Made by a program: the position numbers and the translations under genes
NCBI RefSeq assembly: GCF_003918875.1
Contig: NW_025767431.1
Coordinates: 372,001-436,000 of the forward strand
From: Haliotis rubra
Taxonomy: Eukaryota
Length of the DNA: 64,000 nt
Direction of reading: 5' to 3'
Notes under the pieces: model-generated
Databases searched by the model: none
Seen by the model: only the letters and a program-made list of their open reading frames with translations
Told to the model about the DNA's origin: nothing
Part shown: positions 34,301 to 60,506 of the stretch, piece after piece
Layout: each line of letters opens with the position of its first letter
Numbering within the stretch: position 1 is the stretch's first letter

Positions 34301-36715
34301 GTTAACGTAAACAACTTGAAGTAATGATCAAATACGGACCATGCAAGGATAATACACAGTTGTAAGATCCTTGATTGTTGTAAAAAAGAAGATTTGTTCA
34401 TGTGTTTTCAGGGCATTATTGCAAATTATTTTGAATCGAATTAATTAACGAAATAGAAATGCAAGAATATTTGCATATTTATGATTGCAGAAAGCTTCAC
34501 GAGGAGAAGACGAAATTAACCTATGTTGCTTGTGGTGCAAATCTGGGCCAATCAGCTGTAAGTTTGAACTTGACCGAAGTGGCTATGTTCCGGGGGAATC
34601 TATTCCTATCAAAGCGGAGATCATCAACCACAGTAACAGGAGGATGTGGAGGTCACGCGCAGAGCTACACATGGTATATAAGAGTAGTGTGGTATATAAG
34701 ACATGTTTACTTTCAAAGTCAATTTACTTTTCAACTCAACAGTTCCTCTTGCTTGTGGTAGCTCAGGCAATAACAAACATCACACTGGGGTCAACATTGT
34801 GGGAGTGATGGTACTGGTAGAACACCTGGTGTTCAGGGATCCAATGATGTAACTTGTATCACTGTTCAGCCTTTTACTCTAACTGGAATCTGCATCAGCA
34901 GAGACCGCTTATTCTCTTGACGAGGTATTGGTGATTCTAAATATATTTTATATTGTAAAAGAATGAAAACATATAACGGTTGGCCATTTGCTTAAATTTA
35001 GGTACTTTTGTCATTTCAATGTAAGGAATCATGTTGTACAATCAGTTAGTATGCGCCCGTTTATAAAGTAGACGACAATCTGAGTGTGATAATTCATGTT
35101 TACATTTTGGCTCGTTTTAGACCGAGGCGCTTTATTCATTGATCCCATTTTCTCCAGGCCAATAGACTATGTTCTTTGTTCTAGCATGTCAGTTATCACG
35201 CAACCACTAAGTCAGTAACACATACCAAGAAAATAGGGGAAATATCCCACGGAGGAATTCTTCCTGGAGACTCGGATACATGGAATGGAGACCTTCTACC
35301 GATACCACCATTGCTGCCATCTGAACTAAGTGGATGTCGAATCATTGGAATTCAGTATTTTGTGAGGGTAATTGTTCTGGCATTTACGTAAAAGGTTTTT
35401 ACTTACAAATCAGACGTATACGACATTTATAATTGTTTCTTATAGGAAATAATACATTTCTTGACGCCTTTTAGCTAAATAAACGTGCATTCAAATGGGC
35501 TGCTTGTTGTTAACAGTTTACCCGTCGGTGTGGCCAAAATATAAATTACCTTTATTTTTTTTATCTATGGACTACTGTTTGTTATGTTGCAGTTCTGTGT
35601 AGTTCCCGTTGGACCCGCATACCAGTTAGAGATACCGCTCAAAATAATCATCGGAACTATTCCACTCAGAGAATCTGTTCCTCCAAGGCAGGGTCCAAGC
35701 CAGTCGCACCTTCATCAGGAGAGAGCACAGGCTTTTGCTCCATCCACATCACAGCGTGAGTCTTCCTGTTTCTGTGATACTTCCTGAAATCTACAACCAG
35801 GTCCTTGGCAAATACACTAAACTTAACGTCGTATGTTGAAGACGAATCGTGACGTTTGTCGCTCTTACAACCCTAAAAAATACAGTATATTATAATAATA
35901 ATCTGTAAACCGAGAGATCAAACTCAATGTCAGAAATTCGCTACATTGTTAAAGCAACCAAAAAGAGCTATTTTCACCTTCCTTTGCTTCGAAGAAGTGT
36001 TCAGTATCTTAGCCCACGTCGGATGCTCTTTATCAAAAGTCAGCTGACAGTAAGAAACAAAGATTACGGGCATCCCAGCATTTCCAGTCATCTTCTGTGT
36101 CATATGTTTTGTTCATTCAGATACATCGGTAGTTAACCCGTGAAGATAAGAGTCAGAATTGATCTTTAGTAACGCCTGCTTGCCGTAAGAGGCGACTAAC
36201 AGGATCGGGTGGTCAGGCTCGCTGACTTGGTTGACACATGTCATCGGTTCCAATTTGGGTAGATCAATGCTCACTGGATTGTCTGATCCAGACTCGATTA
36301 TTTAGAGACCGCCACCGTATAACTGGGACATTGCTGAGTACAGCTTTTACCAACAAACCAATCAGAAGACAAACATTGATAGTTAAGTCAATATATTTCC
36401 AACACTGAACCCATCTTCTTATTCGTTGTATTAACAAGAGATCCATGTCAGTTACAAGTATGTTTGAGCATGTTCTTTGTAAGTATAATCCATGTATTTT
36501 TCCTCGCCTGAAAAGTAATTTTTTAATGAATTGTCGTTTCAGCAACACCAACCTATGCCGAGAGTACGTTTGGCAAGGTGAACATAAAAGATGTGGACGA
36601 CACTGAGTATACCAAAGGAGACACGGACTATGCTCCAATGTATGCTTACTACAACGAGGGATCAACAGCTGAGTCTGCAACTGGGGACAAAGAGACTTCA
36701 GCTCCTCCGCAGTAG
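28381..36715 (+). CDS. Alpha-arrestin / arrestin domain-containing protein (ARRDC-like), copy 1, 402 aa, lacking PPxY motifs
   Basis: Seven GT-AG exons: 28381-28525, 32481-32615, 34035-34261, 34491-34673, 35185-35367, 35593-35755, 36543-36715 (1209 nt, open frame). Motifs GVYSP..VKGHV, YPF..LP..LPSSFE..GKIRYW, DKPWKF, CCLWC, GYVPGE, IIIGTIPL. The start codon equivalent to copy 2 is ATC (28408); the in-frame ATG is at 28381. Confidence 0.88.
29097..29560 (-). mobile_element. Retroposon family 3
   Basis: cacatcggcattattttagccatatcgtgac...gccaacaactgaaggtagatcaccat. Confidence 0.7.
30332..30830 (+). mobile_element. Non-LTR retrotransposon 3' fragment
   Basis: NWVTDIRELLYKTGYGYVW...SRFRCSSHALFIETGRY...RICQLCNMNTVKDELHFLLICPVY; tail resumes ~31350-31512 (aataaa + gatt repeats). 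Confidence 0.75.
30825..31350 (-). mobile_element. tRNA-derived SINE with a Deu/Nin-like domain
   Basis: cccagtccacccagctgtgaatgggtacc on the minus strand, (ATGT)n tail; second copy at 53075-53520 (+). Confidence 0.7.
31531..31575 (+). ncRNA. Minimal hammerhead-ribozyme-like motif (Penelope type)
   Basis: CTGATGA (31534-31540), degenerate stem II ggggc..gctc, GAAAC, GTC triplet (31565-31567). Confidence 0.5.
32066..32232 (+). mobile_element. SINE family 1, full length, nested in a family-3 element
   Basis: tRNA-like head ggggcggtggggtagcctagtga...ggttcgaatcccc with A and B boxes. Confidence 0.85.
32717..32888. mobile_element. Short palindromic Penelope pLTR-derived insertion
   Basis: Inverted arms gaggactatttttatggatatacaacttcttta / taaagaagttgtatatccataaaaatactcctc; near-perfect 12-bp TSD tgctg(a/t)atgata; absent in copy 2 (~47885). 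Confidence 0.7.
33543..33700 (-). mobile_element. SINE family 1
   Basis: Homology to the family consensus. Confidence 0.8.
36136..36362 (+). mobile_element. SINE family 2 in intron 6, shared with copy 2 (59895-60103) and so predating the duplication
   Basis: Same position in both paralogs. Confidence 0.8.
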
Positions 36716-36800
36716 ATACATCATCATTGCCAGTAGCTGTAACAAAACTGCAGCATTCAGTCTCTCACCAGTAGATAACATATTTATTGCTAGTATAAGT

Positions 36801-36966
36801 AGTATCTGTAACAATGTGCACAGCTAAGATTTCAGCTACTTCTCAGTAGATGCATCTTCATCTAGATGCATAACTAGTATCTGTAACAATGTGCACAGCT
36901 AAGATTTCAGCTACTTCTCAGTAGATGCATCTTCATCTAGATGCATAACTAATATCTGTAACAATG
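36801..36966. repeat. 75-bp tandem repeat in the 3' UTR of ARRDC copy 1
   Basis: Units at 36801, 36876, 36951 (agtatctgtaacaatgtgcacagctaagatttcagctacttctcagtagatgcatc...). Confidence 0.9.
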
Positions 36967-38604
36967 TGATACTTCAGGCAAACCCACCAGTCGGTTTAGT
37001 GCTGAATAACGGACAGTTACATTATTTGTTTCAATCTTTGTGTTAATAAATGTTCGATTTTAGTTTCCCAATACCTCCTAAGATAGTAGTAATCATTATT
37101 GTGATTGAATTATTTTTAGTTATGCAGATTAAACTGATCGATTGTCTGATACTGGTAGAAAAAGGTTTTATTTTGTTCACTTTTTCTTTTTACACATAGC
37201 AGAAAGAGAGGTTATATACATAGAGAAAGAGAGGGTAACTCCACAAATAGTCACGGCATAATAATGTACTTAAGTCTTGATAAGTTGACAAGAATCCTTT
37301 GTATTTAGAGTATTTCAGTATCCACTGCGGGGACAAAAGCTGGTTAGGGGGCCACTTATAAAGTTTCGTCTGTGGTTTTCTGCGTCATAATTTATGGACT
37401 TAATCCACGTACAGGTTACTTTCCTTAGCAGAGCCCAATATAAAAACAAAACAGGAAGATTGCACTTCTTTGTTCTGTATCAATATATTTACATGAACCA
37501 ATATACCCATATTAAAACTGTAATGATATTGCCATACGTATTTCCGATGTTCTCGAAATATAGAACAGCACAGGGTTGTCTGCGAAACGTTGTCATGATT
37601 ATGACTTCACATATGAACTTGACCAAGATCATATATCGTAACCTGTACACGGATTAAGTCCACGATGCTCTCATGGAAACAGCAAAGGGCACCAAATCAG
37701 TTTAAACATTGACAAGTTTCAGTTGTAGAATATGATCTCAAAACGTTTCGATGTTATACTCCAAAACGAATGCTTTTTTTCAGTTTAAATCCGTCTTTCT
37801 TGCGCAGGAAAGTAACTCAAAACGTACCTGTTTAAGAAATTATAAAAAGAAAACAAATATCTGAAACATATAGAAAGTTTTTTAATATAAAATCAAATGA
37901 TGTCCTAGTCTCCAAATGGGTTTGTTCAACAATCTTCAACATTCTGATGATGTGCATAATGGCGTCCATTGAAAAATCAGATATTAACATTGATCGTGAT
38001 TAGAACATTGTTATTGTGAAGCTTTCGAGGGTTTTTAACGTTCGGAGCATTTTTTGAAATGTTAAAATTTGACTCATCACTGTCAAAATGATGTTCGATA
38101 AGATTTCATAAATTCCATGCACCTTATGATCCCATGAGTTTTCGGGTGAACAGATAAATTGCCTTTGCATGTGTTTGTTGCGCTCACCTTTTAAGCGAAT
38201 GCCTTGTAGATATGCAAATACGGAGATATGCAAATATATAAATCATTGAGATATTGTGATATGGGCAACGTTACTCTCATGCTGCGAGGTAAGCAAACAG
38301 CAACTTCCAGACAATCATGAATTGGTCTTGTATATTTTCGAGACGCGATCTGGAACTTGATAGAATATAGGAATTTTGTGATACATGTATCTCCATTGTT
38401 TCCAAACTTTGAGGAAAGGCAAACGTAGCATTCATCAATTTATTTATCTGTTATCAGATTACCACTGATGATCACATAACTGACGAGGTACGACGACAAG
38501 GTAAACCTGGTCGGTGCGTAAAGGGAGATAACCTAGTATGTAAAACTGACACTAGAAGTGACTGAGACCGACATGAACCATACTTCGTTAGTTAGCTGCT
38601 GCAT

Positions 38605-38895
38605 TATTACCCCCCGTCCATGAGTCCCTCCGTCCGTCCGTCCGTCCATGCGAGATGATGGGTACAGATTTTCTCAAAGATAGGGAAACCAAATTTGTTA
38701 TATATTTTCAGGACATGAATTTCTTGATACAGTTCAAAAACGGAAACCGAATTTGTTACAGAAGTATGGCCCTTGTCATGCGCTTCTTGACTTTTTGCAC
38801 TTTGTCCCCTATGGGAACAGATTTTCTCATGAATTTTTTTCAAAATAGGAACAGAACACTGTGGAGGGGGATACTGATGACCATGCCTATTGTTA
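38605..38895 (+). mobile_element. Helentron-associated (HINE/DINE-like) non-autonomous element
   Basis: tattacccccc...(ccgt)n microsatellite...ggagggggatact architecture. Confidence 0.45.
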
Positions 38896-39990: not shown

Positions 39991-40158
39991 TGAGTGAGTG
40001 AGTGAGTATGGTTTTACGCCGCTTTTAGCAATATTCCAGCAATATCACGGCGGGGGACACCGGAAATGGGCTTCACACATTGTACCCATGTGGGGAATCG
40101 AACCCGGACCTTCGGCGTGACGGGCGAACGCTATGGACACTTGGCTACCCACCGCCCC
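39991..40158 (-). mobile_element. SINE family 1, full length
   Basis: Close to consensus; flanked by direct repeat tgtttacacatg. Confidence 0.85.
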
Positions 40159-43832: not shown

Positions 43833-44426
43833 AAGTGCTGGTATTGGCATACAACTTGCGATACAGTACATCACAATACTAAAATTTTCAGTCACAACCA
43901 TATATTGCTAAAGCATTGTGCATTGAAGCTGTGAAACGATACGAATACCGACATAAGGGTGGCGATACGATACGTATCACGATACTAAATCTTTAATTCT
44001 AACACTAACTTATAAAACACCTTAAGATCAAAACAAAACCATTTTAATGAATTTCGTCAAATTCCGTCAGCGTTTTTCAATGTTCATCCGTAAACGAGAA
44101 AATTAAGTTTATACACGGACTTTGTGAATGTTGATAACATGCGAGCGTTATGTCTGACACACTTCTTGACGCAAGAATTTGCGAGGAAACGTTTACTTAT
44201 GAAGGGAAAATAAGTAAGCATACATTTTAATCATCAAACAAAAGTAAGTTGTTTTTCTTGACAGATATCGCGAGTCGGCAGTAATGAAGTTAAACATCGA
44301 TGTATCGTGGCTCATTTGAAGTATCGTATCGGGATATACGACAATGTAAAACTTTGTATCGATTCACAATATCGGCGGCCCATGGATCGATGCATCGATG
44401 CGTATCGATGAATCGTCACACCACTA
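43833..44426. mobile_element. hAT-like non-autonomous element(s) rich in CGATA motifs
   Basis: Subterminal cgata/tatcg arrays; absent at the paralogous site ~27297. Confidence 0.5.
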
Positions 44427-45216: not shown

Positions 45217-48200
45217 ATGGGCAAACTGAAATTATTTACAATAATTTTAGATAAGCCTACGGGAGTGTACTCACCGTGCGATTATCTCCAGGGTCATGTA
45301 CAGGTGGAATTGACAGGTAAAATGAAAATGAGAGGTAAGTTCTTGCATTATCACACATTTGGACAATTGCTAGAATAGTAAAAGGCAATATGCCACGTTC
45401 GTTTTCTGTTTACGGAACAGATCTCCGAACGTGGTGAACGGGGGCCTTTTGCTGATTTGAATTCTTTTTTCATTATTAATATTTTGTTTGATTCGTTTTC
45501 ATAACTCATGACAAGTTTAACTTATACTTACAAGTAGGGTTGTGCTCTTTTCCGAAGCAGAATTCTAAACTCTGAATATTATTTAATATAACTAGCCAAT
45601 TAAAAATCAGACTATTGGTGATCAGAGATGATGAAATATTTTGAAAGCATTAATTTTGTCTTCTTTGAATTGAAGGTTTCCAACGACGATGAATCAAAGT
45701 TAGGGAACCAATAACAAAACACTATTTGCAATTTGCACAATAGCATCAGTTGATGACTTTTGTTTGTATATGAATGTATGGTTGTGTGCGCGCGCTTGAG
45801 AGGTGGAAGTGGGGGCGGACGGGTACCTGTGGATAATGTTGGGTCATACCCAACACTCCCTCCATTTCCCCTGTTCGTCCACAGAGAACCAAAAACGACA
45901 TAGGGACAAAAACGACTACAGTATAAAGATCAGCTAAGGTGATTGAAGTGAATGTTTCATAAATCATAGACCGTCTGTATATGGACTTTGCCTGTAATTC
46001 CATTGTGTATTCATCTTGATTATGGTGGTGTATATACAAGGATCTGCAGTAATAAAGGCCGTATATATTCCATGTATCTTCTGGATGAAAGACCATGTAC
46101 ACTTAATCATACCATGTTATTGTTACACATACCTCACAAGGAATGCGTCACGATATTGCTGAAATATTGCAAATGTGACGTAAAATCTTAACTCACTCAC
46201 TCACAAGGAATGGGTGAGTGAGTTTAGTTTTACGCCACTTTTAGCATTATTCCAGCAACATCAGAGCGGGGGACACCAGAAATGGGCTTCACACATAGTA
46301 CCCTGTGGGGAATGGAACCCGGGTCTTCGGCGTGACGAGCGAATGCTTTAATTACGAGGATAGTCGACCAACCTAGGCTAGAAGTGACAGCTTAAATAAA
46401 CAGTAGTCGCTAGGCCAGCTGAAGCTGAAAACGTTAGATGTTTACAATGCATTACACTACAGCTATAACACATCGTGTTGTCGACTCATTCCACGATGTG
46501 CCCCACCTAAATGTCAACTAATGTCTTCTTGGATAACCACTGAGGGTCATAGAGGGTTGTTTAACTTGTTGGAGTTGTTGTTGATTTGATTAAATGAGCC
46601 TAAACTGTTTACCAATATCGTATCTCTTCATTTACTGCACGAAGCATACCGGGCTTTTGAACACGCTCAACAAACCAGGCTTTTGAACACGCTCCACAGT
46701 GGTTGAAGCATTCACTGGTGACGTCGAGAACCCGGGTTCGATCCCGAACATGTCTTTCATGTGTGAAAACACACTTTTGGTGTCCCCTGCATTCACCTTA
46801 CCTATGTGTCGAGCAATTTTCCAAAAGTTCCAGCTTTGGTGTTTACATTTCACAACTTTTGAGAAACAAACGATCATCCGACCGTAGTTTGAAAGATCGT
46901 CATATGACTCCTGCACAGAAGTTGTCCAATGAATGTTATAACATTCAAGACCTCAGTAAAACGTTCAAAATGCTGCGCTAAAATTTGGAAATATTTCCCA
47001 ATTTTAACTCATCACAAACAGCAATTATGTCAGTTACAAATGTNNNNNNNNNNNNNNNNNNNNNNNNNNNNNNNNNNNNNNNNNNNNNNNNNNNNNNNNN
47101 NNNNNNNNNNNNNNNNNNNNNNNNNNNNNNNNNNNNNNNNNNNNNNNNNNNNNNNNNNNNNNNNNNNNNNNNNNNNNNGTTATTTGTTTTGGCTTGCCTT
47201 TGCATGTGTTTGGGGCGTGTGCCACCAGTAAGGCAGCATTTGTTCACGGTGTCAAGAACAACTGGTTACATCGGTATATGATAGTGATTGATAAAATAAG
47301 TGACAAAACGTTTTTCATATCCACATATCGAGTTTATGATCCCGACTACATCATGGGCAAGTATTTATGAATCACTATCAAATAGGGATGTTATCAGGTG
47401 TTCGCGAAAAGGTGAGTGTATTCTACCCCACTGGTGAAGATAGCTCTGAAGATGAAATGACAGTGAAATGCTGCTTTCAGAGTTGAGATATATTATATGT
47501 ATCCAATTCACACCATGCTAGATTAGTGACCTACTTATCCAGATCAGGGTTATTTGAAATCTCTTTTTCAATATATTGTATCTTTGTAATGATACAAATA
47601 CGACTATCAGATGATAATATTTGCTCTTCTTGCCAGGCATCAGACTTCATATCTATGGTGGCGCGGAAGTGAAATGGGAAGAGATTGAGAGGAGGGATCG
47701 AGAAGGGAGTTCTGATTGGAGTGGAGAAACCAGGTGCACACACGAAGCAAATGAGACCTACCTTAACAATGAAATGGTTCTATTTGGTAAAGGTATTAAA
47801 ACCTGCTTCAATTAATATATTTTATCATTCAAATGTTTTACCTTTAATGCAATCATTAAATGGTTTACGTTTGATGATCAGTTGCTGAATGACAAGATAG
47901 GATAATTACATTGCGTGTGAACATCCCGGACCCCATTCCCCCAAAGCGATCGGAGCGGCATGACTGTCGCAAATCTATGTTAAAGAGTTACGATCATCAT
48001 AGTGCAACAATCACTTTGTGGGGGACCCGCCCCCTGGTCAAGGTCATTGTATTCAAGAACTTCTTCTCAAACACGATCAGTCAAGCCACATACAAAGATG
48101 CATACAATTAGCTGTCTTGTTTGTTGTTAACTGTTTGTTTGAGGTTTCCGCTACAGAACTTGTGCTATGCGACGGTTCACAACAAACAAACCCTTACAAT

Positions 48201-51200
48201 GTCATGTATATTGTGTGAAAGACCAATTCTTCTACGGGAAGGGGAGGGCATTCTTACCCTTTTCACTAACACCTGTTTTCATTGTTGATATTCAGTTATC
48301 TGTTCATTTATACTCCCTGCTGTTCTTCCTTTCACTTGCACACCCAATGTTTCCGAGTACAATTGAGATTGGCTATTTTCTGGCTTGACATTTTGTCAAT
48401 GTGAGGTAGGTGTTTTTCTCAACAGAAGCCGTTAAAAATCGCACATGACAACTTCAAAATGAACAGTGCATAATTTTACAATAGCAGTCTCAAAAACAGT
48501 TTGAATCTACGTGTACAAGTAAGTATAAAGGATGGTCGTTGTCCACATGGCAGAATGGAATTGGCACAAATAGAACAACGTCGGTTCACTAACACGCCTG
48601 TAGAAGAGAGGACGCTCTTGAGGACTAGATGCATGTACCCCTCCCCCATCCCCACACACTACCCACTGTATAAAGATATCAGACTTCTCCGATTTAACTG
48701 ATGTACAGAAGGTGGATTAAATTCTCTTCTCGCCTGAAGTGATTTTAAACAGTGTCAAGACCTGCAAAGCTATTTTAACTGCGAGTAGTATAGGTAGTAT
48801 AGACAGTTCTGTTACAGGTACCACTCATTGCATTATTTGTGGTCAGATAAGCTCCCATCGATGATTCAAAATGGCGTCTTTCGTTGAGGACCATCGTTGG
48901 ATGTCCCTATATATACTCACACGCAAAAGTAACGCAAGTCAAGTAAAAAGCAGATATGTATGTAATTTTCAATATTAAACACGAGAAATGCAAACAGGGT
49001 GAGATAGACAAAAAAATGAGTGGAGACATTTCATTGGCTGATGACATCATTAAGTTTTCGAAAGGTAAAGGGGTTGAAAAGAACGGATCTCGCTGGTGTT
49101 GATGGGTAATGTGCCGATCTTGTCGAGGGGTTGTGACCCTTGGACGATCGCTCCGAGGAAAGTCATCTGTGGTCTTTGTAGCGTTGGAGACGGTAAATAG
49201 TGGTTATGTTTACGTCGAAATGACGGGCACCATTTTGGACAGACACTCCAGCTTCCGAACGTCTGATAGCCTTGTTTCTTTCAGTTTGAGTTAAGCGTGG
49301 CATTGTTGAACAAGTAATAGACCTAATTTTTGTGCAGTCTTATTCCCACTTCGCGGTGGCGTGTGGTCCTGTGCACAGAGCTCAGGTCACGAATCAGTTG
49401 AAGTTAAGCAACGTCGAGCTCGGACAGTCCTTTGATGGCCGTGTTTGGCAGCTTGACTCCTGACAGTTTCTAGGACTTCAGTCCTACCCCACAACATGTG
49501 GTCTCCAATTAGGCAAGTGAGTTTGTTCCAAATTGCCTCTGTTCACCCAGCAGAAAATGGGTACCCAGTTGGATAAAGTCATGTGACTATAACCTTCTAG
49601 CGCCTAACAGGCAGCTTGGGTGATCCGGGGTAATAGGAATCAGATTCTGATTAAGCGCCGCGAGCAATCACTTGGTGTTTGGAGACTGTGCACTACAGAA
49701 GATGACTTATTATTACTAATGGTAGTGACAATTCGTGCATGTTAGATTTCACGAGAGGTGTGTGCATGATACCCACATGTTCATTGATATGGTGCGTTTT
49801 GGCGATTCCTTCTATTGATGTGTTTTTGCTCGGACCTTCCAAAACGCAACAAAAATTATTGATAACACCATCAGGCTTCACTATATGCCAAAACCCCATA
49901 TAAATTAAGGGTCCGAGTTTGTTTCCTATTTGGATTAAAACTTGCATTTCTTATGCGTGTTAGTATATATATCTAAACAAATTATTTTATGTATTTTAAA
50001 AAAGAAAATTAATACATGAAGCCACCCTGAAGTGTTTGAACGACCGTTTCTCAATCAATGTCCACGTGATATACCTATTATTTAACTACTCTTTTATATT
50101 TTAATTGTGAGAGAGGTAATACATGTACCATGTCGTGGGGTAAGAATATGCTGCCCCATATGCCCTACAGGATAACCTGACAATGTCTCTAATACTGACA
50201 TTGTATTTTCTATTAATTATCATCTGTTTTCAGAAACACTTCTGATAATATTAGAGGAAAATAAAAAAAAAGAAGAAAATCTAAAAATAGAGATTGAAAA
50301 CCTCGAGAGTAAGTATGGAGAAACTATTGTGGAAGGATTAGATAGCAAAACACAAGGATTACAACAGTTACGACAAAAGAAAATAGACGGCATGTTGGTA
50401 AGATCTAAAGCTAAATGGATTGATGAAAGAAAGTGGATCAGTAAAATACTTTTGTAACCTAGAGACTAGAAATTATATCAGCAAAAACATGAAGGAGCCA
50501 GAGACGCCTAACTTCTGGCGATGAAATAATGATAAGAAGCTACCAAATTTTACCATGATCTATACTCATCAAAAGATCACCTAAAGATATTGACCTGAAT
50601 ATTAGTTAACAAGATATATGTAAGATTGAAACTGCAGATACAACTGAAGGCCCAGTAAATAATGATGAACACCTACATGTAACTGCACTTAAAAAATCTA
50701 AAAATAACAAACGTCCAGACTCTGGTGGCTTCTCCTAAGAAATTTTAAAACATTTTCTGGATTGACCTTAGAGACCTTATATAAAGATCACTAAATTTCA
50801 GCTTTGAAACCTAGAAACAAGGAATTATAACAGACATATTGGAAAGACAGACATATTGGAACGAATATTCGTATGATTTATGACTTACTCTTACAGACAG
50901 AATCCAAACAAATACCAGTTATGCTATTACTTGTAGATTTTGAAAAGGCTTTTGATTCAATCTTGGTCTTTTATTTTTAATATCAATTCATTGCGGCTGC
51001 AGACAAAGGGACCCGTTTGCTCCCTTTATATTCTTACTTTGCTCAGAAATATTATAAACTCTTATGAAGAAAAATATAGATATCAAAGGAATAGTGAGTG
51101 AGTTAAAATTTATCGTCACATCGGCATTATTTCAGCCATATCGTGACAATTCATTTTATACATAGTAATTAAAAGTAAATTGTAAAAACCTGTCAACGAA

Positions 51201-54200
51201 GGACAGTGAAATAACTAGACTATCACAGATTCGAATTTAAGACTAGTAATTAGATCTTAAACAGTTTATGTAGATGACAATACAATATAAAAACAGGCTA
51301 TATATTGCCAACAACTGAAGGTAGATCACCATACTAGGGACCATGGGGACTTACAGTAGATATGCTTCCTGCATGGGCCCTAGCTGGATTTACATCACCC
51401 CTTCAGCTGTTAGCAATTGAGATAAAGCTAGCCATATATTAACATAACAGATATTCTACGATTAAAAAAGTGGAGTTTATATTTACTGGGAATGTTTTGG
51501 GACTTACGTTCCCTCTTAGGAGGACAATAATTTTACAGTACTTTAACCCAACTCGAGGATACAGCCACTAACAATCTGAGTTAGGAATTCAAACTTCCAA
51601 TCATAAAATTCTTACCTATTTACAAATCATTTGACAAATCTAATTCTATTTAAAAATGCAATAACTAGATGAGAACTGATATTATTAAATAGATCCTTCA
51701 TAGTTCGTGATTTAATATAGTTTTCCCTTGTGATGGAATATTCAACACAGTATATCAAAGGAATAATGATAGATGGCATTGAATACTTGCTTGTGCAATA
51801 TGCACATGACACTGGATTTATCTTAGATGGTTCAAAGAAATCTTTCGAAGCTGTAAATAATACGTTAGACATATATGCACAAATGTCAGGACTGAAGATC
51901 AGTTATGACATATCAAAAGTCATATGGACAGGAAGCTTTTGAAACAGACCATATTTAGACCAGATTTAAACCTGCGTTGGAACCCTGGGTACTTCAGCAT
52001 TCTTGGACTCAATTATGAAAGTAAAATCTATGAAATTGTGGAAATTAATAAAAGCTGGATGAAAAGAACTATAACGCCTTTTGGGGAAATTGCTATAATA
52101 AAGGCCTTGCTCATTTCCAAATTAAAGTTTCTCTTTCTCACTCTTCCCAACCCACCCACAGAGTTTCTTAAGAAATTGAATGGTATTTTGTTTAGTTTCC
52201 TTTGGGATAATATGCCTGACAAAATAGAGCGGTCAGTAGTTTGTAAGCCACTTGTTGAAGAAGAGCTTGGAATGATAAATATATTTGCATATGTTGATGC
52301 TTTGAAAATAACATGGATTAGAAAATTACCTTGTGCTGATTATGGAAGGAAGAAGGGAAAACTCTTCATTTAAGATTATCCACAGTATTAAACTTTGGCA
52401 ATGAATACATTTCATACAGACGATACTTTTGACTTGATACTACTACTAGTCAAATATTATGTTATAAATGTAAGCTGAGAAAGATAATTCCTATGTTGTC
52501 ATACTTCAAGAAGGAATTAAAGTATTAGTACTTTGAAGAAAAAGCCAGATGTTGGAATAAATCAAAGTTTAATGAATTCAAAAGTAGACGGGCAATGTAT
52601 GTAAAACTTAGATTAGTTCAATGTTATGGTAGAGAATACATGGGTATGAAGGAGAGAGCGAGTGATATATCTTTGCTTAATTATTTTAATATAAAAAATG
52701 GCCGAAGTGGACGACTTTATACATATGACATGGGTGGCCAAGACATGCCCTTGGACACCTCATTCATGGGTGACACCGTAAGCGATGAACTTTTAAAGAC
52801 GACTGTGAATGCTTATTACGAACACTTAAAGAAATACGAAAGTCACGCCGATCCTATAGGTCATGACTATACTAAGTTCCAAATTGATCAAAAAGGATAC
52901 TGCGACTGAAAGCTCATTCGGGTACCAATCTCATGAATTCCGGCACTAGAAACCCCCTTGCATTGTCCATGCTTGCCGGAAGCCATGGTGTTTACTTTGT
53001 CCACGATGAATTTGGTCTGGTAGACTATCGTTGAAAACTTCCGGGAAAACCACCAAAACAATGCAAACAGTGCAGACCGAGCTCGAGGTTGGAGGTGCCA
53101 GGATTGACCAAATCTGTGACCGGGTATAAAAACCTTGGAGTCAACTTGTGTGCGGACTCATTGTTGTCACAACCCCTAGTGTACAGTACACAACCCCGTG
53201 CACTTAGAAGAACCCACGAATCCACTGGTACATGAAAAAAAAAGCGGCCACATGAATACTTGCACACACCTAGTTGTGGGTATAGCAACGTGCAGTAAGA
53301 CAAAGTACTGTGACTACGTGTCCCAGTCCACCCAGCTGTGACTGGGTACCTCGTTCGGATGGGAAAGTCACATTAACTTGGTGTGCCTAGTGGCTGCAAC
53401 AGTTGGATGATTCCCAGGGGGTTGAGATTGTTTGCCGCTGAGATTGAGATCCAATGATTGAGGGTAAAAAAAAAAATACACTTTGAGCATGCATGTGGGA
53501 TGGACTATAGAGCTATTTACATAGCCATATAATAATGATAAGAAAGAAGAATAAATTCATCAAGCAAAATAAACTTTTTAGAAATTATGAAAAAAACACT
53601 TCTACAGGCAACTGAAAACAATCGGTGATGGAGAGCACGACAAGCGGCAGGTTCTGGAAACAGTTGTGGTCTGTAGCCGGCGACTGTAACCTTGAGGCAC
53701 CATGGGTCCGTGATTATGACCATGCAATGCATGAGAAAGTAACTAGGTCGTTTGTCTGTTACCTTTCACCAGACTGCCTGAAAAGTGTCATCAAAAAGTC
53801 CAACTCTAATACAGCTACAGGGCCTGATGGCATTCGAAACCGGTATTGGAAACTGTTCCCCTCTGTCAAAACACCATTACTCTACTGCTTCAATACTCTG
53901 GTGGACACAGGTGATGTTCCTCCATGGTTCTGCAAAGGTCGCACAATACTCCTTCCCCAAAAAGGAGACTTGACTGATCCTAAATACTTCCACCCTATCA
54001 CATGTTTGAATACTCAGTATAAAATCTTCACAGGGTCTCTGACAAACCTCGTGTCATCCTACTGTTCTCCCAATGATATAATTTATTGAGAGCAGAAGTG
54101 AGCGAGAAAGGGATGTTGGGGGTGCAAGGATCAACTTCTTGTACAAAAAATGATTTTGGAAGAGGCTAAAACATATCAGCACGACCTCTCCATGTGCTGG

Positions 54201-57200
54201 ATTGACAACAAAAAAGAAAGAGCCATACGGCTCTGTCCCTCATGAATGGATTCTGAAGTCTCTTCATTGTATCGACCACCCGGAGCGACTACTTGATTTA
54301 ACAAGTCTTTAATGAGTTGCTGGTCGACTCAACTTGAGATGTACTCGCAAGGGCAGGTGCTGACTTCGGAATCTATTTTAATCAGAAGGGGAATCAGGGC
54401 TCCAGATAAGGGCCGTATCGGCTTATGTACTGCTAAAATGTATGCACAATACGACAGGAAATAATTTAGGAAACGTGGCAGATACGCACCACAGCAATAG
54501 TGTAAGGTCTTAGAATCATTTACAGACGTATGTATCTACAAAAAGTATTTTCTTTATTGTATATTGACCTGTTTACACAAGACTAGCAATGTTGTTGTGC
54601 ATATATGAAACGAAACACACATTTACTGATACGCCATTAAAGTCCATTCAGTACTCTTAATGCTCTCTTAAGTTTTTCCAGTTCTCCTATATTTAAAAAA
54701 TTAGGAGTATGTACTCCTGATGTTGAAAAAGTATCTGGAGCCCAGGGGAATTTTCCAGGGGGACTCCTTCAGTCCTTCACTTATTTGTTTGTCTCTAAAT
54801 TCTTTGAGCTTCCTGCTCAACCGAGAGGAAGGTAACCATCCCGGACCTCCTCAGCACAGATCCCCAACATCGCTTACTCATTTCCTTTACATGGATGACA
54901 TCGAGCTCCTTGCCAAAGGAGATACCAATTTGAAAGAACAAGTTCTCCTTGTCGAGTCCTTTTCTAATGATATTGGCATGACATTTGGACTGGACAAATG
55001 TAATACTCTTCATTTGAAACGTGGCAAGGTGGTTCATGGTGGATCGGTCAAGTTACAGGGGGGAGGAGTTATTGAACATCTTGTGGAAGATCAGGCCTAC
55101 ACCTATCTTGGAATGCAAGTTCGATACAAGCTCCAGAGTGCCCAAATTCAAGAAAAACTTCGGGCCGAGTACATATCTCGCTTGAAGAAAATCTGGAGCT
55201 CAGGCGCCAGTTCTCTAAGTACTTTCTGTCTTTTGCTTGTTTGGGAATGCAGGAGATAACTCCCCTATTCATCGTCAAAGTTAGGTGATCATTTACAAAA
55301 GATTACTTTATATTTCGAAGAATCCACTGTCCCAGGTCTAGACTCTGGTTGTTTTTCATTGATTCGATTTGCTCTAAGGATTTCATTCTTGTCGATTGGG
55401 GTGTCTAATTCATTTTGCAATTTTTCCATCACGAGGGACAGTTAAGGATCTTTTTCATATAATGTCAATTATCGTTTAATAATCGAATTTTTAAAAGAAA
55501 TAGAATTATTAGATACATTTTGATTAATATTTTTTGTAAATGGTAAATGTAAATGGTATTTTATACATAGCAGTATACATTAGCAACTGCAATTGTTAGC
55601 GGCTATATCCTTTTTAGGCTGTGAAACAATCGTAAAATAATTGTCCTACCGAGAGGGCACGTAAATCCCAAAACTTTCAAAGTTAAATATAAGCATACCA
55701 GATTTTTAAACGTAATATTTTGGTCTTTTAAAGTTGGGCTATTTTTTTCCTACAATCGCCAGTGGCTGAAGGGATGGTGTAAATCCAACTACAGTCCATG
55801 CATGTAGCAAAGGTACCGTAAGTCTCCTTTGTCTCTAGTATGGTGATCTAATTTCAGTTGTTTGGTGATCTATAGCCTGTTTTTAAATTGTATCGACCTC
55901 TATTGTTAAACTTTAGTTTTAGATTTATTTACTAGTTTTAAATATATACCTGTGATATTCTAGTTGTTTTACTGTCCTTCGCTGACAGATGTTTATAATA
56001 TAGTTTTAATCATTATAAATCTATAGCTTGTTTTAGTCACGATATGGCTGAAGTATTGATATATCACTCACTCATTTTGCAAAGTATTTGGAAGGGTTTG
56101 GGGTATTTAGTTCTGAAAGAGACCAAGTAGTTTTCGTCATGCATACAGTCCTGCTCAGGGTCGGAATACAGATTTTGAGATAAAAAAGAAATCAAGTCTG
56201 GCTTGCTGCTTTGGAATGTTTTTCCACCTGGTATATTGCCTTGTATCAATATTGAGGTCACGCCAGGTATCCACCAGATTTAATTGATCTAACTTCTCTA
56301 TGATTATTTCCTTAGCATTAGGATTATTTACATGTTTATAGTTCTCTAAACCGGTAGTTGGATGCATAACTATAAGGTCCAGTCAGCACACAACACCATT
56401 GATTTATATTATCAAATTCATCAATTTCTTCTAAAAGGGTATTGTAGAATGCTTATTTGGTCCATAGACATTAGTTAAAGTCAACTTTATGCCGTCCACA
56501 CTTGTGTCTACAGACGACATTTTAATCTTCGATGGGAGCTTATCTGATCACAAATAACGCCATGAGGGGTACCTGTAACAGAACTGTCATTCCCTATACT
56601 ACTCAACCCGTACAGATTTCGTATGTCCCAGCTAATCATTTGATCGTTTGAAAACATCTGCTCTTTGTAGCATATTTCAATCTTTTAAATGTGTGTTTTG
56701 CATTTCATCTTTAACAAATACTTTTACAATATACGTTTAATTATCTCATGCACTTTTAATGCCCTTTGTGATAAGCAATATATTGTTAGTTTCTGTGAAT
56801 ATCTTATGTCATTTCGTGTTACATCGTCTCTCAAAAGCCAGTTTTTTTGGATGGCTCGCTCTACGTTTATATGTAAATTCTATGTTTGTACTTTTGGCTT
56901 AAGAGCAGAGACGTGAATAAAAATATATGTCTGTCTGTCCGTCTGTCTGTCTGTCGAGAATATGACACTGCGTGTTAAATCTCGCATGTATTGTTTAAGT
57001 AAGATTCAGTAATCCGATATTTATTGATGATTACCTCTGTGCGTTCAATTCTTCTTACACGTATATTTAACAGAGGCTCAAACGAGAAATGGGGTTAATA
57101 CAGGACGATGTACAATTTTGTTTACATATGCAATGCTAACCGCATTGTAAAACTGGGATTCTTGTACGAAGATATTAAATATGTCATGTGTAACAGTCTC

Positions 57201-60200
57201 TTTGTTGTTGTTTTGGTTACAGGTATGTCCTTATTCCAATACACGTCAGAACATGTGGCCACCATATGTAGTAACGAGGTTAAGTTTATTCATCAAATTC
57301 GTACTGACCATATATCTGTGTACTTGCGTATTTTTCACCAAAAGTCTGCCTGAAAGCGAAACTATATCTCGACAAAATTAAAAACTTGTTCTTCCTGTTA
57401 TAGTTTATGTTAAATCTCAAAAGACTCAATATTTACCATTTCCCATTTTGTAGCGTCGGGACAAAAAGGAGACAACCCAACACTACCTGCAGGAAGTTAT
57501 ACATTTCCTTTCCGATACCAGCTGCCATATTCTCTACCTCCCTCGTTTGAGGGTTCGGTCGGAAGAATAAGATACTGGATTACAGGTACCATTGACAAGC
57601 CATGGAAGTTTGACGACAGAACGAAAAAGGTGTTTACAGTTGCCGGTCAACTCGACCTCAACCAGCGCCCCGAAGCAATGGTAGGTGATAGATAGTGCGC
57701 AAAATTATTCCATATAATTGTTAACCATGTAAGGATATTTCAGGGTTGTGTGAGGCTTGAATGTTGCGAAAACGAAGATATGTTCATGTGTTTGCAGAGA
57801 ATAGCTGCAAATTGTTTTAAACCATTTAACAAATAGAATTGCAGGCAATAGTTGCTTATGTATGATTGCAGAAAGTGTTGCGAGGTGAAGACGAAATTTA
57901 CATATGTTGCCTGTGCTGCGAATCTGGGCCAATCAGCTGTAACTTTGAACTTGACCGAAGTGGCTACGTTCCTGGGGAATCTATTCCTATCAAAGCCAAG
58001 ATCACCAACCACAGTAACAGGACGATTCGGGGATCAAGCGCAGTATTATACTCGGTATGTAAGAATAGTGTGACATATAAGAATAGCTCATATCTTGACG
58101 TGTTTACTTTGAAAGTCAATTTACTCTTCAACTCAACAGTTCTTCTTGCTTCTGGTAGCTTAGGCAATAACAAACATCACTCTGGTATCAACATTGTGGG
58201 AGTGATAAATAGAATCTCACCCTCGTGTCTACTGATATCAATTATATCAACAATCGTTGATAAAGAAAATGAAAAATGTACATCTCTCAACACTGTACTA
58301 CCATTAGGCTTGTAGTGCAGCAATGTCATAGCATTGTGACGTCATCAAGTTGATGACGTCATAGCATTGTTAGGGTATTGTACAAAATCTACTGTCAAAA
58401 CACTGTCGTTTATTTTAAATTAGATACTAATGTCATTTCAGTGTAAGGTATCATATTGTACAGTTATTATGAACCCGTATATAAAGTAGATTAAAACGTG
58501 GGATGATGTACGTGTACATTTTGGCTCATTATAGATCGAGACCCTGTATTTATTGATGCCATTTTCTCAAGGCTTAGAGACTATGCTCTGTGTTCTAGAT
58601 GGTCACCTATTATGCAACGACAAAGTCAAAAACAGAGGAAAACATAATAGGGAAACTATCCCACAGAAGAATTCTTCCTGGAGACTCAGATACATGGAAT
58701 GGAGACCTTCTACCGATTCCACCATTGCCTCCATCTGACCAAAGGGGATGTCGAATCATTGGAATTGAGTATTATGTGAAGGTAAAAATAAGTCAGATTT
58801 GTGAAGCTAAAAATAAATCAGATTTATACGACAGTTATAATTGTCAGTTATAGGAAATAACAGTTTTTAGGCTCCAAATTGCTAATAAACGTGCAGTGTA
58901 CGGCATACTGTTTACCCGTCGCTGTGCGGGAAACATATTAACGTGTATATCTTGGATCTGTGGACTATTATATTACATCGTGTCTCGGGAAATACGGGGT
59001 TTTATCAGTCCCGAGTAAGGTTGTATACTTACTTTGCCGAGTAACCTTCCGAAGGACTGATAAAATCCCGTATTTCCCGACACACGATGTGATAACGCAT
59101 TTATCTGGCCGAATGTTTTTACTAAATCAAAAGAAAACAATACGCATCGAATCGACTTGTTTTTATTTATGTGATCGATTGACCTCAATGCAGCGCACGT
59201 TACTAAAGGCTTGGCGATGCACGCTATTCTCACTTCGCGTGGTCACCGAGGCGTGGCGGGATAATATGACTTTTGTACTCCCTGCTCGCGGATCGTGACG
59301 GGTGAACATGGTATTTTAGCAGAGTCATGTGAACCAATCAAAACTCGACATTCTTACATGAGGCTGGATACTGTTTGTTATGTTGCAGTTCTCTGTAGTT
59401 CCCACTGGACCTGCAAGCCAGTTAGATATACGGCTGAAAATAATCATTGGAACCATTCCTCTCTTGCCTGGGATCGGAGAGCCTATTCCTCCAAGTTACG
59501 GTCCAGGGCAGTGGCAGCTTCATCAGGGGAGAGTACAGGCTTTTGCTCCACCAACAACATCACAGCGTGAGTCTTCTTACTGTGTTACTTCCTCAAATCT
59601 ACACACTAAACGCCGTATATCGAAGACGAATTGTGCCGTTTGTCGCTGTTAAAACCCTACTATGTATTTAACCAACCTTAAACTGAAAGATCGAACTCAA
59701 TATCAGAAATTCTCTAAAACAACATTTACCCTTTCTTCGCTTCGAAGAATTGTTCAAGGTTTAACAGTATCTTAGCCCACTTAGGAAGCACTTTATCCAG
59801 AGTCGGCTAACAGTAAGAAGATTACGGGCATCCCAACATTTTCAGTCATCCCTCTTTGCCATATATTTTGTTCATTCTGATACATCGGTAGTTGACCTGT
59901 GAAGACCCGAGTTAAATTGATCTTCAGCCACCCACGCTGGTCATAAGAGGCGAGTAAGGGGATCAGGTGGTCATGCTCGCTGACTTGGTACACTCATGAC
60001 ATCGCATCCAAATTGCAGAGATCGATGCTCATGCTATTGATGATTGGGGATTGTCTGCTCCAGACTAATTTTTTTTACAGGTGCGGCGTTAAACAACAAC
60101 CAATTAGCTAACCAAGATATAAGTCATACATCATATTTCCAAAATTGGACCCCTCTTCTCATTCGTTGTATTATCAAAAGATCCATGCCAGTTACAAGTT

Positions 60201-60506
60201 TCCTACGTAAAACGTGTTCTTTCTAAGTGTAATTCATCGCGTGGCTTTGCGTTTTTCCTAGCCAGAAAAGTAACTATTGAATGCTTTTTCGTTTCAGCAA
60301 CACCAACGTATGCCGAGAGTACGTTTGGTAAGGTGAACATAAGAGATGTGGACGACACTGAGTATACCAAAGGAGACACGGACTATGCTCCAATGTATGC
60401 TTACTACAACGAGGGATCAAGAGCTGAGCCTTCAGCTCCTCCACAGTACTTAGATGCATCCACATCTCCAGTAACAACACTGAAGCCTCCAGTCACTCAC
60501 CAATAG
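45217..60506 (+). CDS. Alpha-arrestin / arrestin domain-containing protein (ARRDC-like), copy 2, 417 aa, with PPSY and PSAPPQY
   Basis: Seven GT-AG exons: 45217-45334, 47637-47792, 57454-57680, 57872-58054, 58599-58781, 59389-59566, 60298-60506 (1254 nt, open frame); starts aaccATGG-MGKLKLF. Confidence 0.92.
46213..46360 (-). mobile_element. SINE family 1
   Basis: Homology to the family consensus. Confidence 0.8.
47044..47178. other. Assembly gap
   Basis: N run. Confidence 0.99.
48912..49967 (-). mobile_element. Internally deleted Tc1/mariner element
   Basis: TIRs tatactcacacgcaaaagtaacgcaagt / acttgcatttcttatgcgtgttagtata, TA flanks; from ATG 49303: MPRLTQTERNKAIRRSEAGVSVQNGARHFDVNITTIYRL...RPRVTTPRQDRHI (frameshifted). 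Confidence 0.85.
49350..49710 (+). mobile_element. SINE with a 5S rRNA-derived segment and Deu-like domain, nested in Tc1
   Basis: gaagttaagcaacgtcgagctcggacagtcctttgatgg (49400-49438) resembles the 5S internal control region; ctctgttcacccagcagaaaatgggtaccc downstream. Confidence 0.6.
50150..52560 (+). mobile_element. L1/Tx1-clade LINE ORF2 remnant
   Basis: GMLVRSKAKWIDE, KYFCNLE, VDFEKAFDS, QYAHDT, ALLISKLKFL..LPNP, FSFLWDNMPDKI; many stops and frameshifts; interrupted by a family-3 element. Confidence 0.85.
53075..53520 (+). mobile_element. Deu/Nin-domain SINE, same family as 30825-31350
   Basis: gagtcaacttgtgtgcggactc...cccagtccacccagctgtgactgggtacc. Confidence 0.7.
53560..55200 (+). mobile_element. 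R2/NeSL/R4-group non-LTR retrotransposon RT remnant
   Basis: ATGPDGIRNRYWK, PITCLNTQYKIFT, RRGIFQGDSFSP, HFLYMDDI, DIGMTFGLDKC, YTYLG. Confidence 0.85.
54395..54744. mobile_element. MITE (CAGGG termini, 7-8 bp TSD) inserted in an RT motif
   Basis: TIR cagggctccagata / tatctggagccca; TSD (a)ggggaat; removing it restores IRRGIFQGDS. Confidence 0.85.
55200..56510 (-). mobile_element. L1/Tx1-clade LINE remnant (endonuclease and RT start), opposite orientation
   Basis: LTNVYGPN, LVDTWRDLN..RQYT..QQARLDFFFIS, GVISCIPK..KDRKYLENWR. Confidence 0.8.
58968..59369. mobile_element. Hairpin-bearing non-autonomous DNA element in intron 5 of copy 2
   Basis: catcgtgtctcgggaaatacggg..ttttatcagtcc / ggactgataaaatcccgtatttcccgacacacgatg; absent in copy 1. 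Confidence 0.65.

What the first reader, a model, noticed from the sequence alone, without database searches (positions are those of the whole stretch)
35680..60449. Paired alpha-arrestins: one keeps ligase/ESCRT docking motifs, the other has none
Seen: copy 2 has PPSY (59488-59499) and PSAPPQY (60429-60449). At the same positions copy 1 has PPRQ (35680-35691) and TSAPPQ-stop. The usual PPPxY site reads PTPTY in both. Established: PPxY binds NEDD4-family WW domains and P[ST]AP binds the TSG101 UEV domain (used by ARRDC1 for microvesicle budding). Inference: copy 1 keeps an intact arrestin fold but cannot recruit ligase, so it could act as a natural decoy or dominant-negative partner of copy 2.
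Basis: partly seen in the sequence, partly recalled or inferred. Interest (0 to 1): 0.75.

Follow-up and report, generated by a model that had tools for sequence, protein, structure and literature searches.

The report
Abalone alpha-arrestin pair with swapped docking motifs
Two neighbouring abalone alpha-arrestin genes really do differ in their ligase and ESCRT docking motifs, but the copy with motifs gained its two PPxY sites recently. The copy without motifs is one of many such relatives, so nothing shows it acts as a decoy.

Summary
The window (Haliotis rubra) holds two tandem alpha-arrestin genes on the + strand, each with 7 exons and an intact ORF. Copy 1 is 28381-36715 (402 aa). Copy 2 is 45217-60506 (417 aa). 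The N gap lies in intron 1 of copy 2 and touches no motif.

The word "keeps" is wrong. Six related Haliotis genes end at PSAPPQ-stop or close variants, and four of them read PPxQ-like where copy 2 has PPSY. The family's usual PPxY was lost (PTPTY) before the duplication. Copy 2 then gained PPSY by three substitutions. It gained PPQY by a 4-bp insertion that destroyed the old stop codon and added 19 further residues after the new Tyr. Copy 1 kept the old stop and lost the old C-terminal PSAP through a 21-bp insertion.

Both ORFs have been kept open by selection, yet both evolve fast (omega 0.9 and 0.7, against 0.22 in relatives). Copy 2 is the faster copy.

Motif-less alpha-arrestins are common: 15 of 139 relatives, human ARRDC5 and several fly genes. 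No RNA data were available, so the decoy idea stays untested.

Another note of this scan on the same window (s1-322383) had already proposed the 4-bp insertion. I tested it and it holds.

The parts
28381..36715 (+). Copy 1 (c1), an alpha-arrestin gene of 402 aa. Coding exons: 28381-28525, 32481-32615, 34035-34261, 34491-34673, 35185-35367, 35593-35755, 36543-36715.
   Evidence: Spliced ORF open with all GT-AG junctions. The annotated protein P0002 maps exactly to these exons but skips exon 5. Pfam Arrestin_N and Arrestin_C match.
45217..60506 (+). Copy 2 (c2), an alpha-arrestin gene of 417 aa. Coding exons: 45217-45334, 47637-47792, 57454-57680, 57872-58054, 58599-58781, 59389-59566, 60298-60506.
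   Evidence: Spliced ORF open. The annotated protein P0154 maps to exons 2-7, plus a 75-nt extra exon at 50234-50308, and starts at ATG 45328.
47044..47178 (.). Assembly gap inside intron 1 of copy 2.
   Evidence: the flanks are collinear with intron 1 of copy 1, and no coding sequence is nearby.
35680..35691 (+). PPRQ in copy 1, the ancestral-like PPxQ state.
   Evidence: The two nearest relatives read CCT CCG CTG CAG (PPLQ); copy 1 reads CCT CCA AGG CAG.
59488..59499 (+). PPSY in copy 2, a derived PPxY.
   Evidence: AGT TAC against AGG CAG in copy 1 and CTG CAG in the two nearest relatives: three substitutions in two codons. Present in X1 and X4 contigs.
35750..36556 (+). PTPTY in copy 1, split by intron 6 (last bases of exon 6 plus the first 14 of exon 7). 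It sits at the position of the family's canonical PPxY.
   Evidence: Relatives read PPPSY or PPPTY followed by AE at this column.
59561..60311 (+). PTPTY in copy 2, at the same position and with the same loss.
   Evidence: The loss is shared by both copies, so it predates the duplication.
36543..36675 (+). Conserved tail block in copy 1 (PTPTYAESTFGKVNI.DVDDTEYTKGDTDYAPMYAYYNEGS). The matching block in copy 2 is 60298-60430.
   Evidence: Only 4 differences in 133 nt between the copies (2 synonymous, 2 not), against about 17% in other exons and about 30% in introns. The block is conserved across molluscan relatives.
36676..36696 (+). 21-bp in-frame insertion specific to copy 1 (approximate placement). 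Together with a P>T change it turns the ancestral PSAP into TSAP.
   Evidence: Absent from copy 2, P0152 and P0151. Most relatives have PSAP here.
36713..36715 (+). Ancestral stop codon (TAG) directly after ...SAPPQ in copy 1.
   Evidence: The stop and the following ATA(C/T)A... are shared with P0151 (TAG) and P0152 (TAA). Six related Haliotis proteins end at this residue.
60429..60449 (+). PSAPPQY in copy 2: the ancestral PSAP joined to a new PPQY.
60447..60506 (+). Stop-loss extension of copy 2. TA[CTTA]GAT replaces TAGAT, giving Tyr plus 19 residues read from former 3' UTR, up to TAG at 60504-60506.
   Evidence: Four-way alignment of the 3' ends. No indel in X1, X2 or X4 contigs.
28381..28410 (+). 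Moved start codon of copy 1. The family ATG is ATC at 28408-28410, and a new in-frame ATG lies at 28381.
   Evidence: The two nearest relatives have ATA/ATT and an in-frame TGA where copy 1 has ATG and TGC.

Best explanation
These are two young tandem paralogues of an alpha-arrestin clade that has expanded in abalone (NCBI names them 'ARRDC3-like').

Shown:
- The clade's ancestral tail carried a canonical PPxY, a conserved acidic/aromatic block, and PSAPPQ followed directly by the stop codon.
- The common ancestor of the two copies lost the canonical PPxY (PPPxY became PTPTY).
- After the duplication, copy 2 made two new PPxY sites. PPSY arose by three substitutions in a PPxQ. PPQY arose when a 4-bp insertion destroyed the stop codon, fusing the old PSAP to a new Tyr and adding 19 further residues from the former 3' UTR.
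- Copy 1 kept the old stop and the PPxQ. It lost PSAP through a 21-bp in-frame insertion, so it has none of these motifs.
- Both ORFs have been kept open, but both evolve about 3 to 4 times faster at replacement sites than their relatives. Copy 2 is the faster copy.

Inferred:
- Copy 2 works as a NEDD4-type ligase adaptor with a TSG101 handle. The regain of PPxY looks compensatory.
- Copy 1 is a weakly constrained alpha-arrestin without these motifs, of the ARRDC5 kind. If it acts at all, it does so through its arrestin fold and the conserved tail block, not through WW ligases.
- Competition with copy 2 for cargo is possible but is supported by nothing here.
For: Gene models and domains.

Identity and family: P0002 and P0154 are the annotated H. 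rubra proteins. TXNIP and ARRDC3 are the nearest solved relatives.

Polarity of the motif changes:
- Protein alignment with six Haliotis paralogues, all ending at PSAPPQ-stop or close variants, four of them PPxQ-like at the PPSY site.
- Nucleotide alignment of the 3' ends, showing the stop and downstream UTR shared by copy 1, P0151 and P0152, with the small insertion only in copy 2.
- Codon alignment at the PPSY site.

Sister relation of the two copies: 100/100 support; branch lengths 0.17 for copy 1 and 0.31 for copy 2.

Selection:
- Branch codon model: omega 0.90 (copy 1), 0.71 (copy 2), 0.57 (stem), 0.22 (background). Equality with the background is rejected at p 4e-4 for copy 1 and 3e-5 for copy 2.
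- Introns show 16 indels per kb, 81% of them not multiples of three, yet no coding indel breaks the frame upstream of the ancestral stop; the only non-3n coding difference is the indel that removed that stop in copy 2.
- The chance that an ORF stays open under neutrality is about 2e-4 for copy 1 and 7e-9 for copy 2.
- Replacements on the copy 1 lineage avoid conserved columns (7 of 20 against 62% expected, p 0.014).
- Copy 1's start codon was relocated together with removal of an in-frame TGA.

Independent reads: the tail of copy 2 appears unchanged in contigs of two samples and of a second organism label.

Motif-less members are common: 15 of 139 relatives lack both motifs. ARRDC5 and several fly alpha-arrestins lack PPxY and do not pull down WW proteins (PMC10110545, PMC10945707).
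Against: - There are no expression data for either copy.
- Omega for copy 1 (p 0.79) and copy 2 (p 0.15) cannot be told from 1, so recent loss of constraint in either copy is not excluded.
- The annotated copy 1 model skips exon 5, which would break the arrestin C domain.
- Copy 1 has replacements at otherwise invariant residues: C>W in CCLCC, P>L, D>N.
- That the new PPxY sites bind WW domains, and that their gain was selected, is inferred from the motif alone.
- Polarity rests on paralogues 53-67% identical. No true pre-duplication orthologue was found.
Confidence: 0.7

Rival explanations
1. Copy 1 is a selected natural decoy: it binds the same cargo as copy 2 but cannot recruit ligase or ESCRT, and so damps the action of copy 2.
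For: Copy 1 has complete arrestin domains and no [PL]PxY or P[ST]AP. Its ORF has been maintained. Its replacements avoid conserved columns. Its start codon was rescued. It sits next to copy 2, so shared regulation is conceivable.
Against: Nothing shows co-expression or shared cargo. The motif-less state is mostly inherited, not acquired, since PPxQ, the stop and PTPTY are all ancestral or pre-duplication. Omega is 0.90. The proteins are only 72% identical, with many changes in the fold. Known motif-less alpha-arrestins act by other partners. 11% of relatives lack both motifs without a motif-bearing neighbour being needed.
Confidence: 0.1
2. Copy 1 is a gene in decay, recently released from constraint and on its way to becoming a pseudogene. 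Its lack of motifs is part of that decay.
For: Omega of 0.90 is not different from 1. The ancestral ATG is lost. PSAP is lost. There are replacements at invariant residues. The annotated model skips exon 5. No RNA or transcript-derived protein was found.
Against: No stop or frameshift in 402 codons, with a chance of about 2e-4 under neutrality. All indels are in frame. All splice sites are intact. The tail block is nearly unchanged. Its branch is half as long as that of copy 2. The new ATG came with removal of an in-frame stop.
Confidence: 0.15
3. Both copies still dock WW ligases through the shared non-canonical xPxY sites of the conserved tail block (TPTY and APMY). On this view the motif difference matters little.
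For: The block that holds both sites is the best-conserved part of the two genes. TPTY sits exactly at the canonical PPxY column.
Against: WW group I ligands need [LP]P before xY (established knowledge). The YAPxY block is conserved even in relatives that also have a true PPxY, so it probably serves another purpose. Copy 2 making two fresh PPxY sites suggests the old site no longer sufficed.
Confidence: 0.05

Closest known systems
Human ARRDC1 (PSAP plus PPxY tail; TSG101 and WWP2/NEDD4 recruitment, ARMM budding)
   Same: Alpha-arrestin fold followed by a tail that combines P[ST]AP and PPxY. Copy 2 has both, and most molluscan relatives do too.
   Different: Orthology to ARRDC1 was not tested. 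NCBI names these genes 'ARRDC3-like', and the nearest solved chains are TXNIP and ARRDC3. The PPxY sites of copy 2 are new and not homologous to the family's canonical site. Budding activity is unknown.
Human ARRDC5 and the PPxY-less Drosophila alpha-arrestins
   Same: Alpha-arrestin fold without any PPxY, as in copy 1. These proteins do not enrich WW-domain partners (PMC10945707) and have their own functions (PMC10110545).
   Different: Copy 1 is a very young, lineage-specific paralogue rather than an old conserved gene. It evolves fast, and its function and expression are unknown.
Overlapping viral late domain PTAPPEY (Ebola VP40 type)
   Same: PSAPPQY in copy 2 overlaps a P[ST]AP with a PPxY in the same way. 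Two relatives carry PSAPPAY or PSAPPSY at the canonical site.
   Different: This is a cellular protein. The overlap arose by stop-codon loss at the C-terminus. The resemblance to VP40 is recalled from general knowledge and was not tested.
Short linear motif turnover and C-terminal extension by stop-codon loss
   Same: Loss of a motif at one site and gain at nearby sites in a disordered tail. ORF extension into the 3' UTR after a small indel.
   Different: Here both gains fall in one paralogue soon after duplication, while the sister copy retains the ancestral terminus. This gives a clean before-and-after pair.

Membership tests
Alpha-arrestin (ARRDC/TXNIP family) | Arrestin_N domain | tested here: met
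   PF00339 on exon 3: 75.9 bits for copy 1 and 81.8 bits for copy 2. The annotated proteins carry PF00339.
Alpha-arrestin (ARRDC/TXNIP family) | Arrestin_C domain | tested here: met
   PF02752 on exons 4 and 5 of both copies. Exon 5 of copy 1 alone scores 25.5 bits, just under the 27.7-bit cut-off for a whole protein.
Alpha-arrestin (ARRDC/TXNIP family) | Closest solved relatives are alpha- not beta-arrestins | tested here: met
   For the paralogue P0152: TXNIP 4ll1 at E 2.8e-28, C. elegans ARRD 7usy_J, ARRDC3 4r7x.
Alpha-arrestin (ARRDC/TXNIP family) | C-terminal [PL]PxY motif(s) for NEDD4-family WW domains (typical, not universal) | tested here: met
   Met for copy 2 (PPSY, PPQY). Not met for copy 1, which has none. 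29 of 139 relatives also have none.
ARRDC1-type (ESCRT-recruiting) alpha-arrestin | P[ST]AP motif in the tail | tested here: met
   Copy 2 has PSAP at 60429-60440. Copy 1 reads TSAP, so the feature is not met for copy 1.
ARRDC1-type (ESCRT-recruiting) alpha-arrestin | Binding of the TSG101 UEV domain and vesicle budding | not testable with these tools
   Needs pull-down and budding assays.
ARRDC1-type (ESCRT-recruiting) alpha-arrestin | Orthology to vertebrate ARRDC1 | not tested
   No vertebrate ARRDC sequences were placed in the tree. NCBI names say ARRDC3-like or ARRDC17-like.
Dominant-negative or decoy paralogue | Co-expression with the active paralogue | tested here: inconclusive
   No RNA run holds either gene. 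The 'RNA?' run X8 lies only on intronic repeats.
Dominant-negative or decoy paralogue | Purifying selection on the motif-less copy | tested here: inconclusive
   Omega 0.90, not different from 1. However, the ORF is maintained (about 2e-4 under neutrality) and replacements avoid conserved columns (p 0.014).
Dominant-negative or decoy paralogue | Shared cargo or partner with the active paralogue | not testable with these tools
   Needs interaction assays.

The most novel reading that the evidence does not exclude
After an alpha-arrestin lost its canonical ligase-docking site, selection rebuilt that function in only one of two daughter copies. One of the two new sites came from a stop-codon-destroying insertion that created a virus-like PSAPPQY late-domain motif. 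The sister copy was kept as a ligase-blind and ESCRT-blind partner that modulates the first.
Probability: 0.1. Interest if true: 0.6.

Novelty: new member of a known kind. Interest (0 to 1): 0.3.

Why it matters
The pair is a tidy natural example of how short docking motifs in a disordered tail are lost and rebuilt. One daughter gene shows the ancestral terminus (PSAPPQ-stop). The other shows the same sequence turned into PSAPPQY by loss of the stop. For alpha-arrestin biology it offers two closely related proteins that differ in WW and TSG101 handles. That makes them a convenient pair for testing what those handles add. It is not a new kind of system, because motif-less alpha-arrestins and PSAP/PPxY tails are both well known.

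Tried and rejected
- RNA evidence. Two run searches found only DNA holders. The three small 'RNA?' runs hold 0.01-0.02 of the words, and the one I laid (X8) lies only on intronic repeats. Expression could therefore not be tested. Reads were laid on the tail of copy 2, so the features of copy 1 were not checked in reads.\n- Three-taxon distance split of dS. It gave unstable values (omega for copy 1 from 0.66 to 2.75 depending on the outgroup) because outgroup dS is 0.4-0.7. I replaced it with a joint ML branch model.\n- First E2 donor choice (TTTG|GTAAAG). I dropped it for the donor 6 nt downstream, which the two nearest relatives (P0151, P0152) and both annotated proteins (P0002, P0154) use.\n- Exon 3 was first sought at 32890-33400, where a conserved non-coding ORF misled me. 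The real exon is at 34035-34261.\n- A compensated frameshift in exon 2 of copy 2 (gaps of 10 and 11 nt) was considered. No alternative frame resembles relatives, so I read it as an in-frame 21-nt difference.\n- Gene conversion as the cause of the near-identical exon 7 block. Similarity starts at the exon boundary and the flanking intron is diverged, so protein-level constraint is the simpler reading. Two synonymous differences where about 6.6 are expected (p about 0.04) leave conversion open.\n- Structure prediction of copy 1 was not done. The full spliced protein has no reference id, and the annotated P0002 lacks exon 5.\n- No closer orthologue of either copy was found in H. rufescens, H. cracherodii or H. 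asinina among proteins of 188-597 aa.
Full report
**What is there.** The window comes from Haliotis rubra: the annotated proteins that map to it are named 'arrestin domain-containing protein 3-like [Haliotis rubra]'. It holds two alpha-arrestin genes in tandem on the + strand.
- By comparing the two copies, translating the homologous blocks and fixing the splice sites, I obtained two 7-exon GT-AG models with open frames.
- Copy 1 runs 28381-36715 (402 aa). Copy 2 runs 45217-60506 (417 aa).
- Exon lengths and intron phases match those of two relatives whose genes I mapped exactly: P0152 (H. rubra, same contig) and P0151 (H. rufescens).
- Pfam Arrestin_N and Arrestin_C match exons 3-5 of both copies. 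The nearest solved chains for the paralogue P0152 are TXNIP, a C. elegans ARRD protein and ARRDC3.
- The public annotation agrees with my exons. P0002 is copy 1 without exon 5. P0154 is copy 2 with a later start codon and an extra 75-nt exon at 50234-50308.

**The gap.** The N run at 47044-47178 lies in intron 1 of copy 2.
- Sequence on both sides is collinear with intron 1 of copy 1.
- No exon, frame or motif depends on the gap. All the motifs lie 12 kb downstream in exons 6 and 7.
- Only the attachment of exon 1 of copy 2 to the rest of the gene rests on this scaffold join.

**The observation.** I laid public contigs on 57400-60700:
- X1 shows no difference over exons 6 and 7 of copy 2.
- X2, a second sample, has one clean contig covering 60391-60700, which includes PSAPPQY and the extension. 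A further X2 contig over 60289-60420 carries the copy 1 letters at the listed diagnostic places, so it probably comes from copy 1.
- X4, filed under another organism label, has PPSY and PSAPPQY with no indel. In the exon 7 tail it shows only a Tyr>Phe change at 60403 and a synonymous change at 60467.

**Which state is ancestral.**
- A search of protein representatives with exon 3 and a word search with P0002 returned a large molluscan family and a Haliotis-specific clade.
- In a tree the two copies are sisters (100/100) on a long stem. They sit next to P0151 and P0152.
- In the alignment six Haliotis relatives end at PSAPPQ, PSAPQQ, PSAPTQ, SAPPQ, PSAPPP or PSSHPQ, followed by the stop.
- At nucleotide level copy 1, P0151 and P0152 share CAG TAG/TAA ATA(C/T)A.... 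Copy 2 alone reads CAG TAC TTA GAT. A 4-bp insertion destroys the stop and lets translation run 19 further codons into former 3' UTR, up to TAG at 60504-60506.
- So the terminus of copy 1 is ancestral, and PPQY in copy 2 is new. Another note of this scan on the same window (s1-322383) had proposed this; it holds.
- At the other site, four of the Haliotis relatives read PPLQ, PPPQ or PQIQ. At codon level the two nearest read CTG CAG, copy 1 reads AGG CAG and copy 2 reads AGT TAC. PPSY is therefore also new and needed three substitutions in two adjacent codons.
- The family's canonical PPxY (PPPSYAE or PPPTYAD in relatives) reads PTPTY in both copies, so it was lost before the duplication.
- The C-terminal PSAP is ancestral. 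Copy 1 lost it through a 21-bp in-frame insertion plus a P>T change.

In short, copy 2 did not 'keep' its ligase sites; it rebuilt them. Copy 1 is close to the ancestral tail minus PSAP.

**Are the genes alive?**
- The proteins are 72% identical, and pairwise dN/dS is 0.7-0.85 with dS about 0.22.
- A codon branch model that I wrote (GY94 type, F3x4, tree ((c1,c2),P0151,P0152), 386 codons) gives omega 0.90 for copy 1, 0.71 for copy 2, 0.57 for their stem and 0.22 for the relatives.
- Both copies differ from the background (p 4e-4 and 3e-5). Neither differs from 1 (p 0.79 and 0.15).
The frames say otherwise.
- Introns 3-6 differ by 16 indels per kb, 81% of them not multiples of three. Within the coding region, no length difference breaks the frame upstream of the ancestral stop. 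The only non-3n difference is the indel complex at and just after that stop, which extends copy 2.
- With these rates, the chance of an ORF staying open under neutrality is about 2e-4 for copy 1 and 7e-9 for copy 2.
- Replacements assigned to the copy 1 lineage avoid conserved columns (7 of 20 against 62% expected, p 0.014). Those of copy 2 do not (18 of 34).
- Copy 1 lost the family's ATG (now ATC). It also gained an in-frame ATG 27 nt upstream, together with a TGA>TGC change that removes the stop standing between them in both nearest relatives.
- The first 133 nt of exon 7 differ at only 4 places between the copies.

My reading is that both genes have been kept as coding genes, with relaxed or partly adaptive change. 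Copy 2, the motif bearer, is the faster and more derived copy.

**How it probably works.**
- From established knowledge, PPxY binds NEDD4-family WW domains and P[ST]AP binds the TSG101 UEV domain, as in ARRDC1. Copy 2 therefore has what an E3 adaptor with an ESCRT handle needs. Two independent gains after loss of the canonical site look compensatory. This is inference.
- Copy 1 has neither motif. Such alpha-arrestins are ordinary. Of 139 full-length relatives, 29 have no [PL]PxY in the tail, 53 have no P[ST]AP and 15 have neither.
- Human ARRDC5 is the one human member without PPxY (PMC10110545). It and the PPxY-less fly members do not enrich WW proteins in interactomes (PMC10945707). They have their own partners.
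- The simplest expectation for copy 1 is therefore ligase-independent scaffolding through the fold and the conserved tail block. That block contains YAP[VM]Y, which fits a YxxPhi sorting signal; this is my inference and was not tested.
- Alternatively, copy 1 may be drifting slowly toward loss. A decoy role is possible but has no support here.

**Limits.**
- No RNA run holds either gene, and no transcript-derived protein of either copy is in the protein collection.
- Polarity rests on paralogues 53-67% identical, not on a true pre-duplication orthologue.
- Indel expectations come from 1.6 kb of aligned intron.
- WW and UEV binding are predicted from motifs only.

**Verdict.** The evolutionary direction is corrected. 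The decoy idea is untested and not favoured. This is a new member of a known kind, with a neat case of motif turnover by stop-codon loss.

Noticed in passing
window 50234-50308: The annotated copy 2 protein (P0154) includes a 75-nt cassette exon with good splice sites (ttttcag|...|gtaagt) in an A-rich low-complexity part of the 9.7-kb intron 2. It would insert 25 residues (ETLLIILEENKKKEENLKIEIENLE) into the arrestin N domain and is absent from all relatives.
   Followed up: partly
window 51730-55260: Sense-strand retrotransposon remains lie in intron 2 of copy 2. The ORF at 54720-55259 matches Pfam RVT_1 (E 2.5e-10). This intron is 9661 nt, against 1419 nt in copy 1.
   Followed up: partly
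window 58177-58400, 58954-59397, 59842-60063: Very high contig depth (1e4 to 1e6) in all four runs marks high-copy interspersed repeats inside introns 4, 5 and 6 of copy 2. The 'RNA?' run X8 touches only these repeats.
   Followed up: no
window 28381-28410: The start codon of copy 1 has moved. The family ATG is ATC, a new ATG lies 27 nt upstream, and the in-frame TGA seen in both nearest relatives is TGC in copy 1.
   Followed up: yes
window 36543-36675 and 60298-60430: The first 133 nt of exon 7 are 97% identical between the copies, while neighbouring introns are about 70-77% identical. The encoded block (...GKVNI.DVDDTEYTKGDTDYAPMYAYYNEGS) is conserved across molluscs and its function is unknown. 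YAPM fits a YxxPhi signal. Partial gene conversion is not excluded.
   Followed up: partly
window 47690-47760 (exon 2 of copy 2): Copy 2 has a 21-nt longer and strongly diverged loop in the arrestin N domain (EIERRDREGSSDWSGETRCTHE). It replaces three residues that are nearly invariant in the family (T, T, Y).
   Followed up: partly
L001 3001-9403 (same contig as the window, record positions 451889-464291, reversed): A third paralogue, P0152 (393 aa), lies on the same 556-kb contig. It has the canonical PPTY and the C-terminal PSAP. It pairs with H. rufescens P0151 at omega about 0.2.
   Followed up: partly
window 30894-31294 and 53092-53473: An inverted repeat copy, 82% identical, is shared between intron 1 of copy 1 and intron 2 of copy 2. 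Several other dispersed repeat matches occur (29094-29591 with 51093-51469, 55703-56058 and 61419-61686).
   Followed up: no
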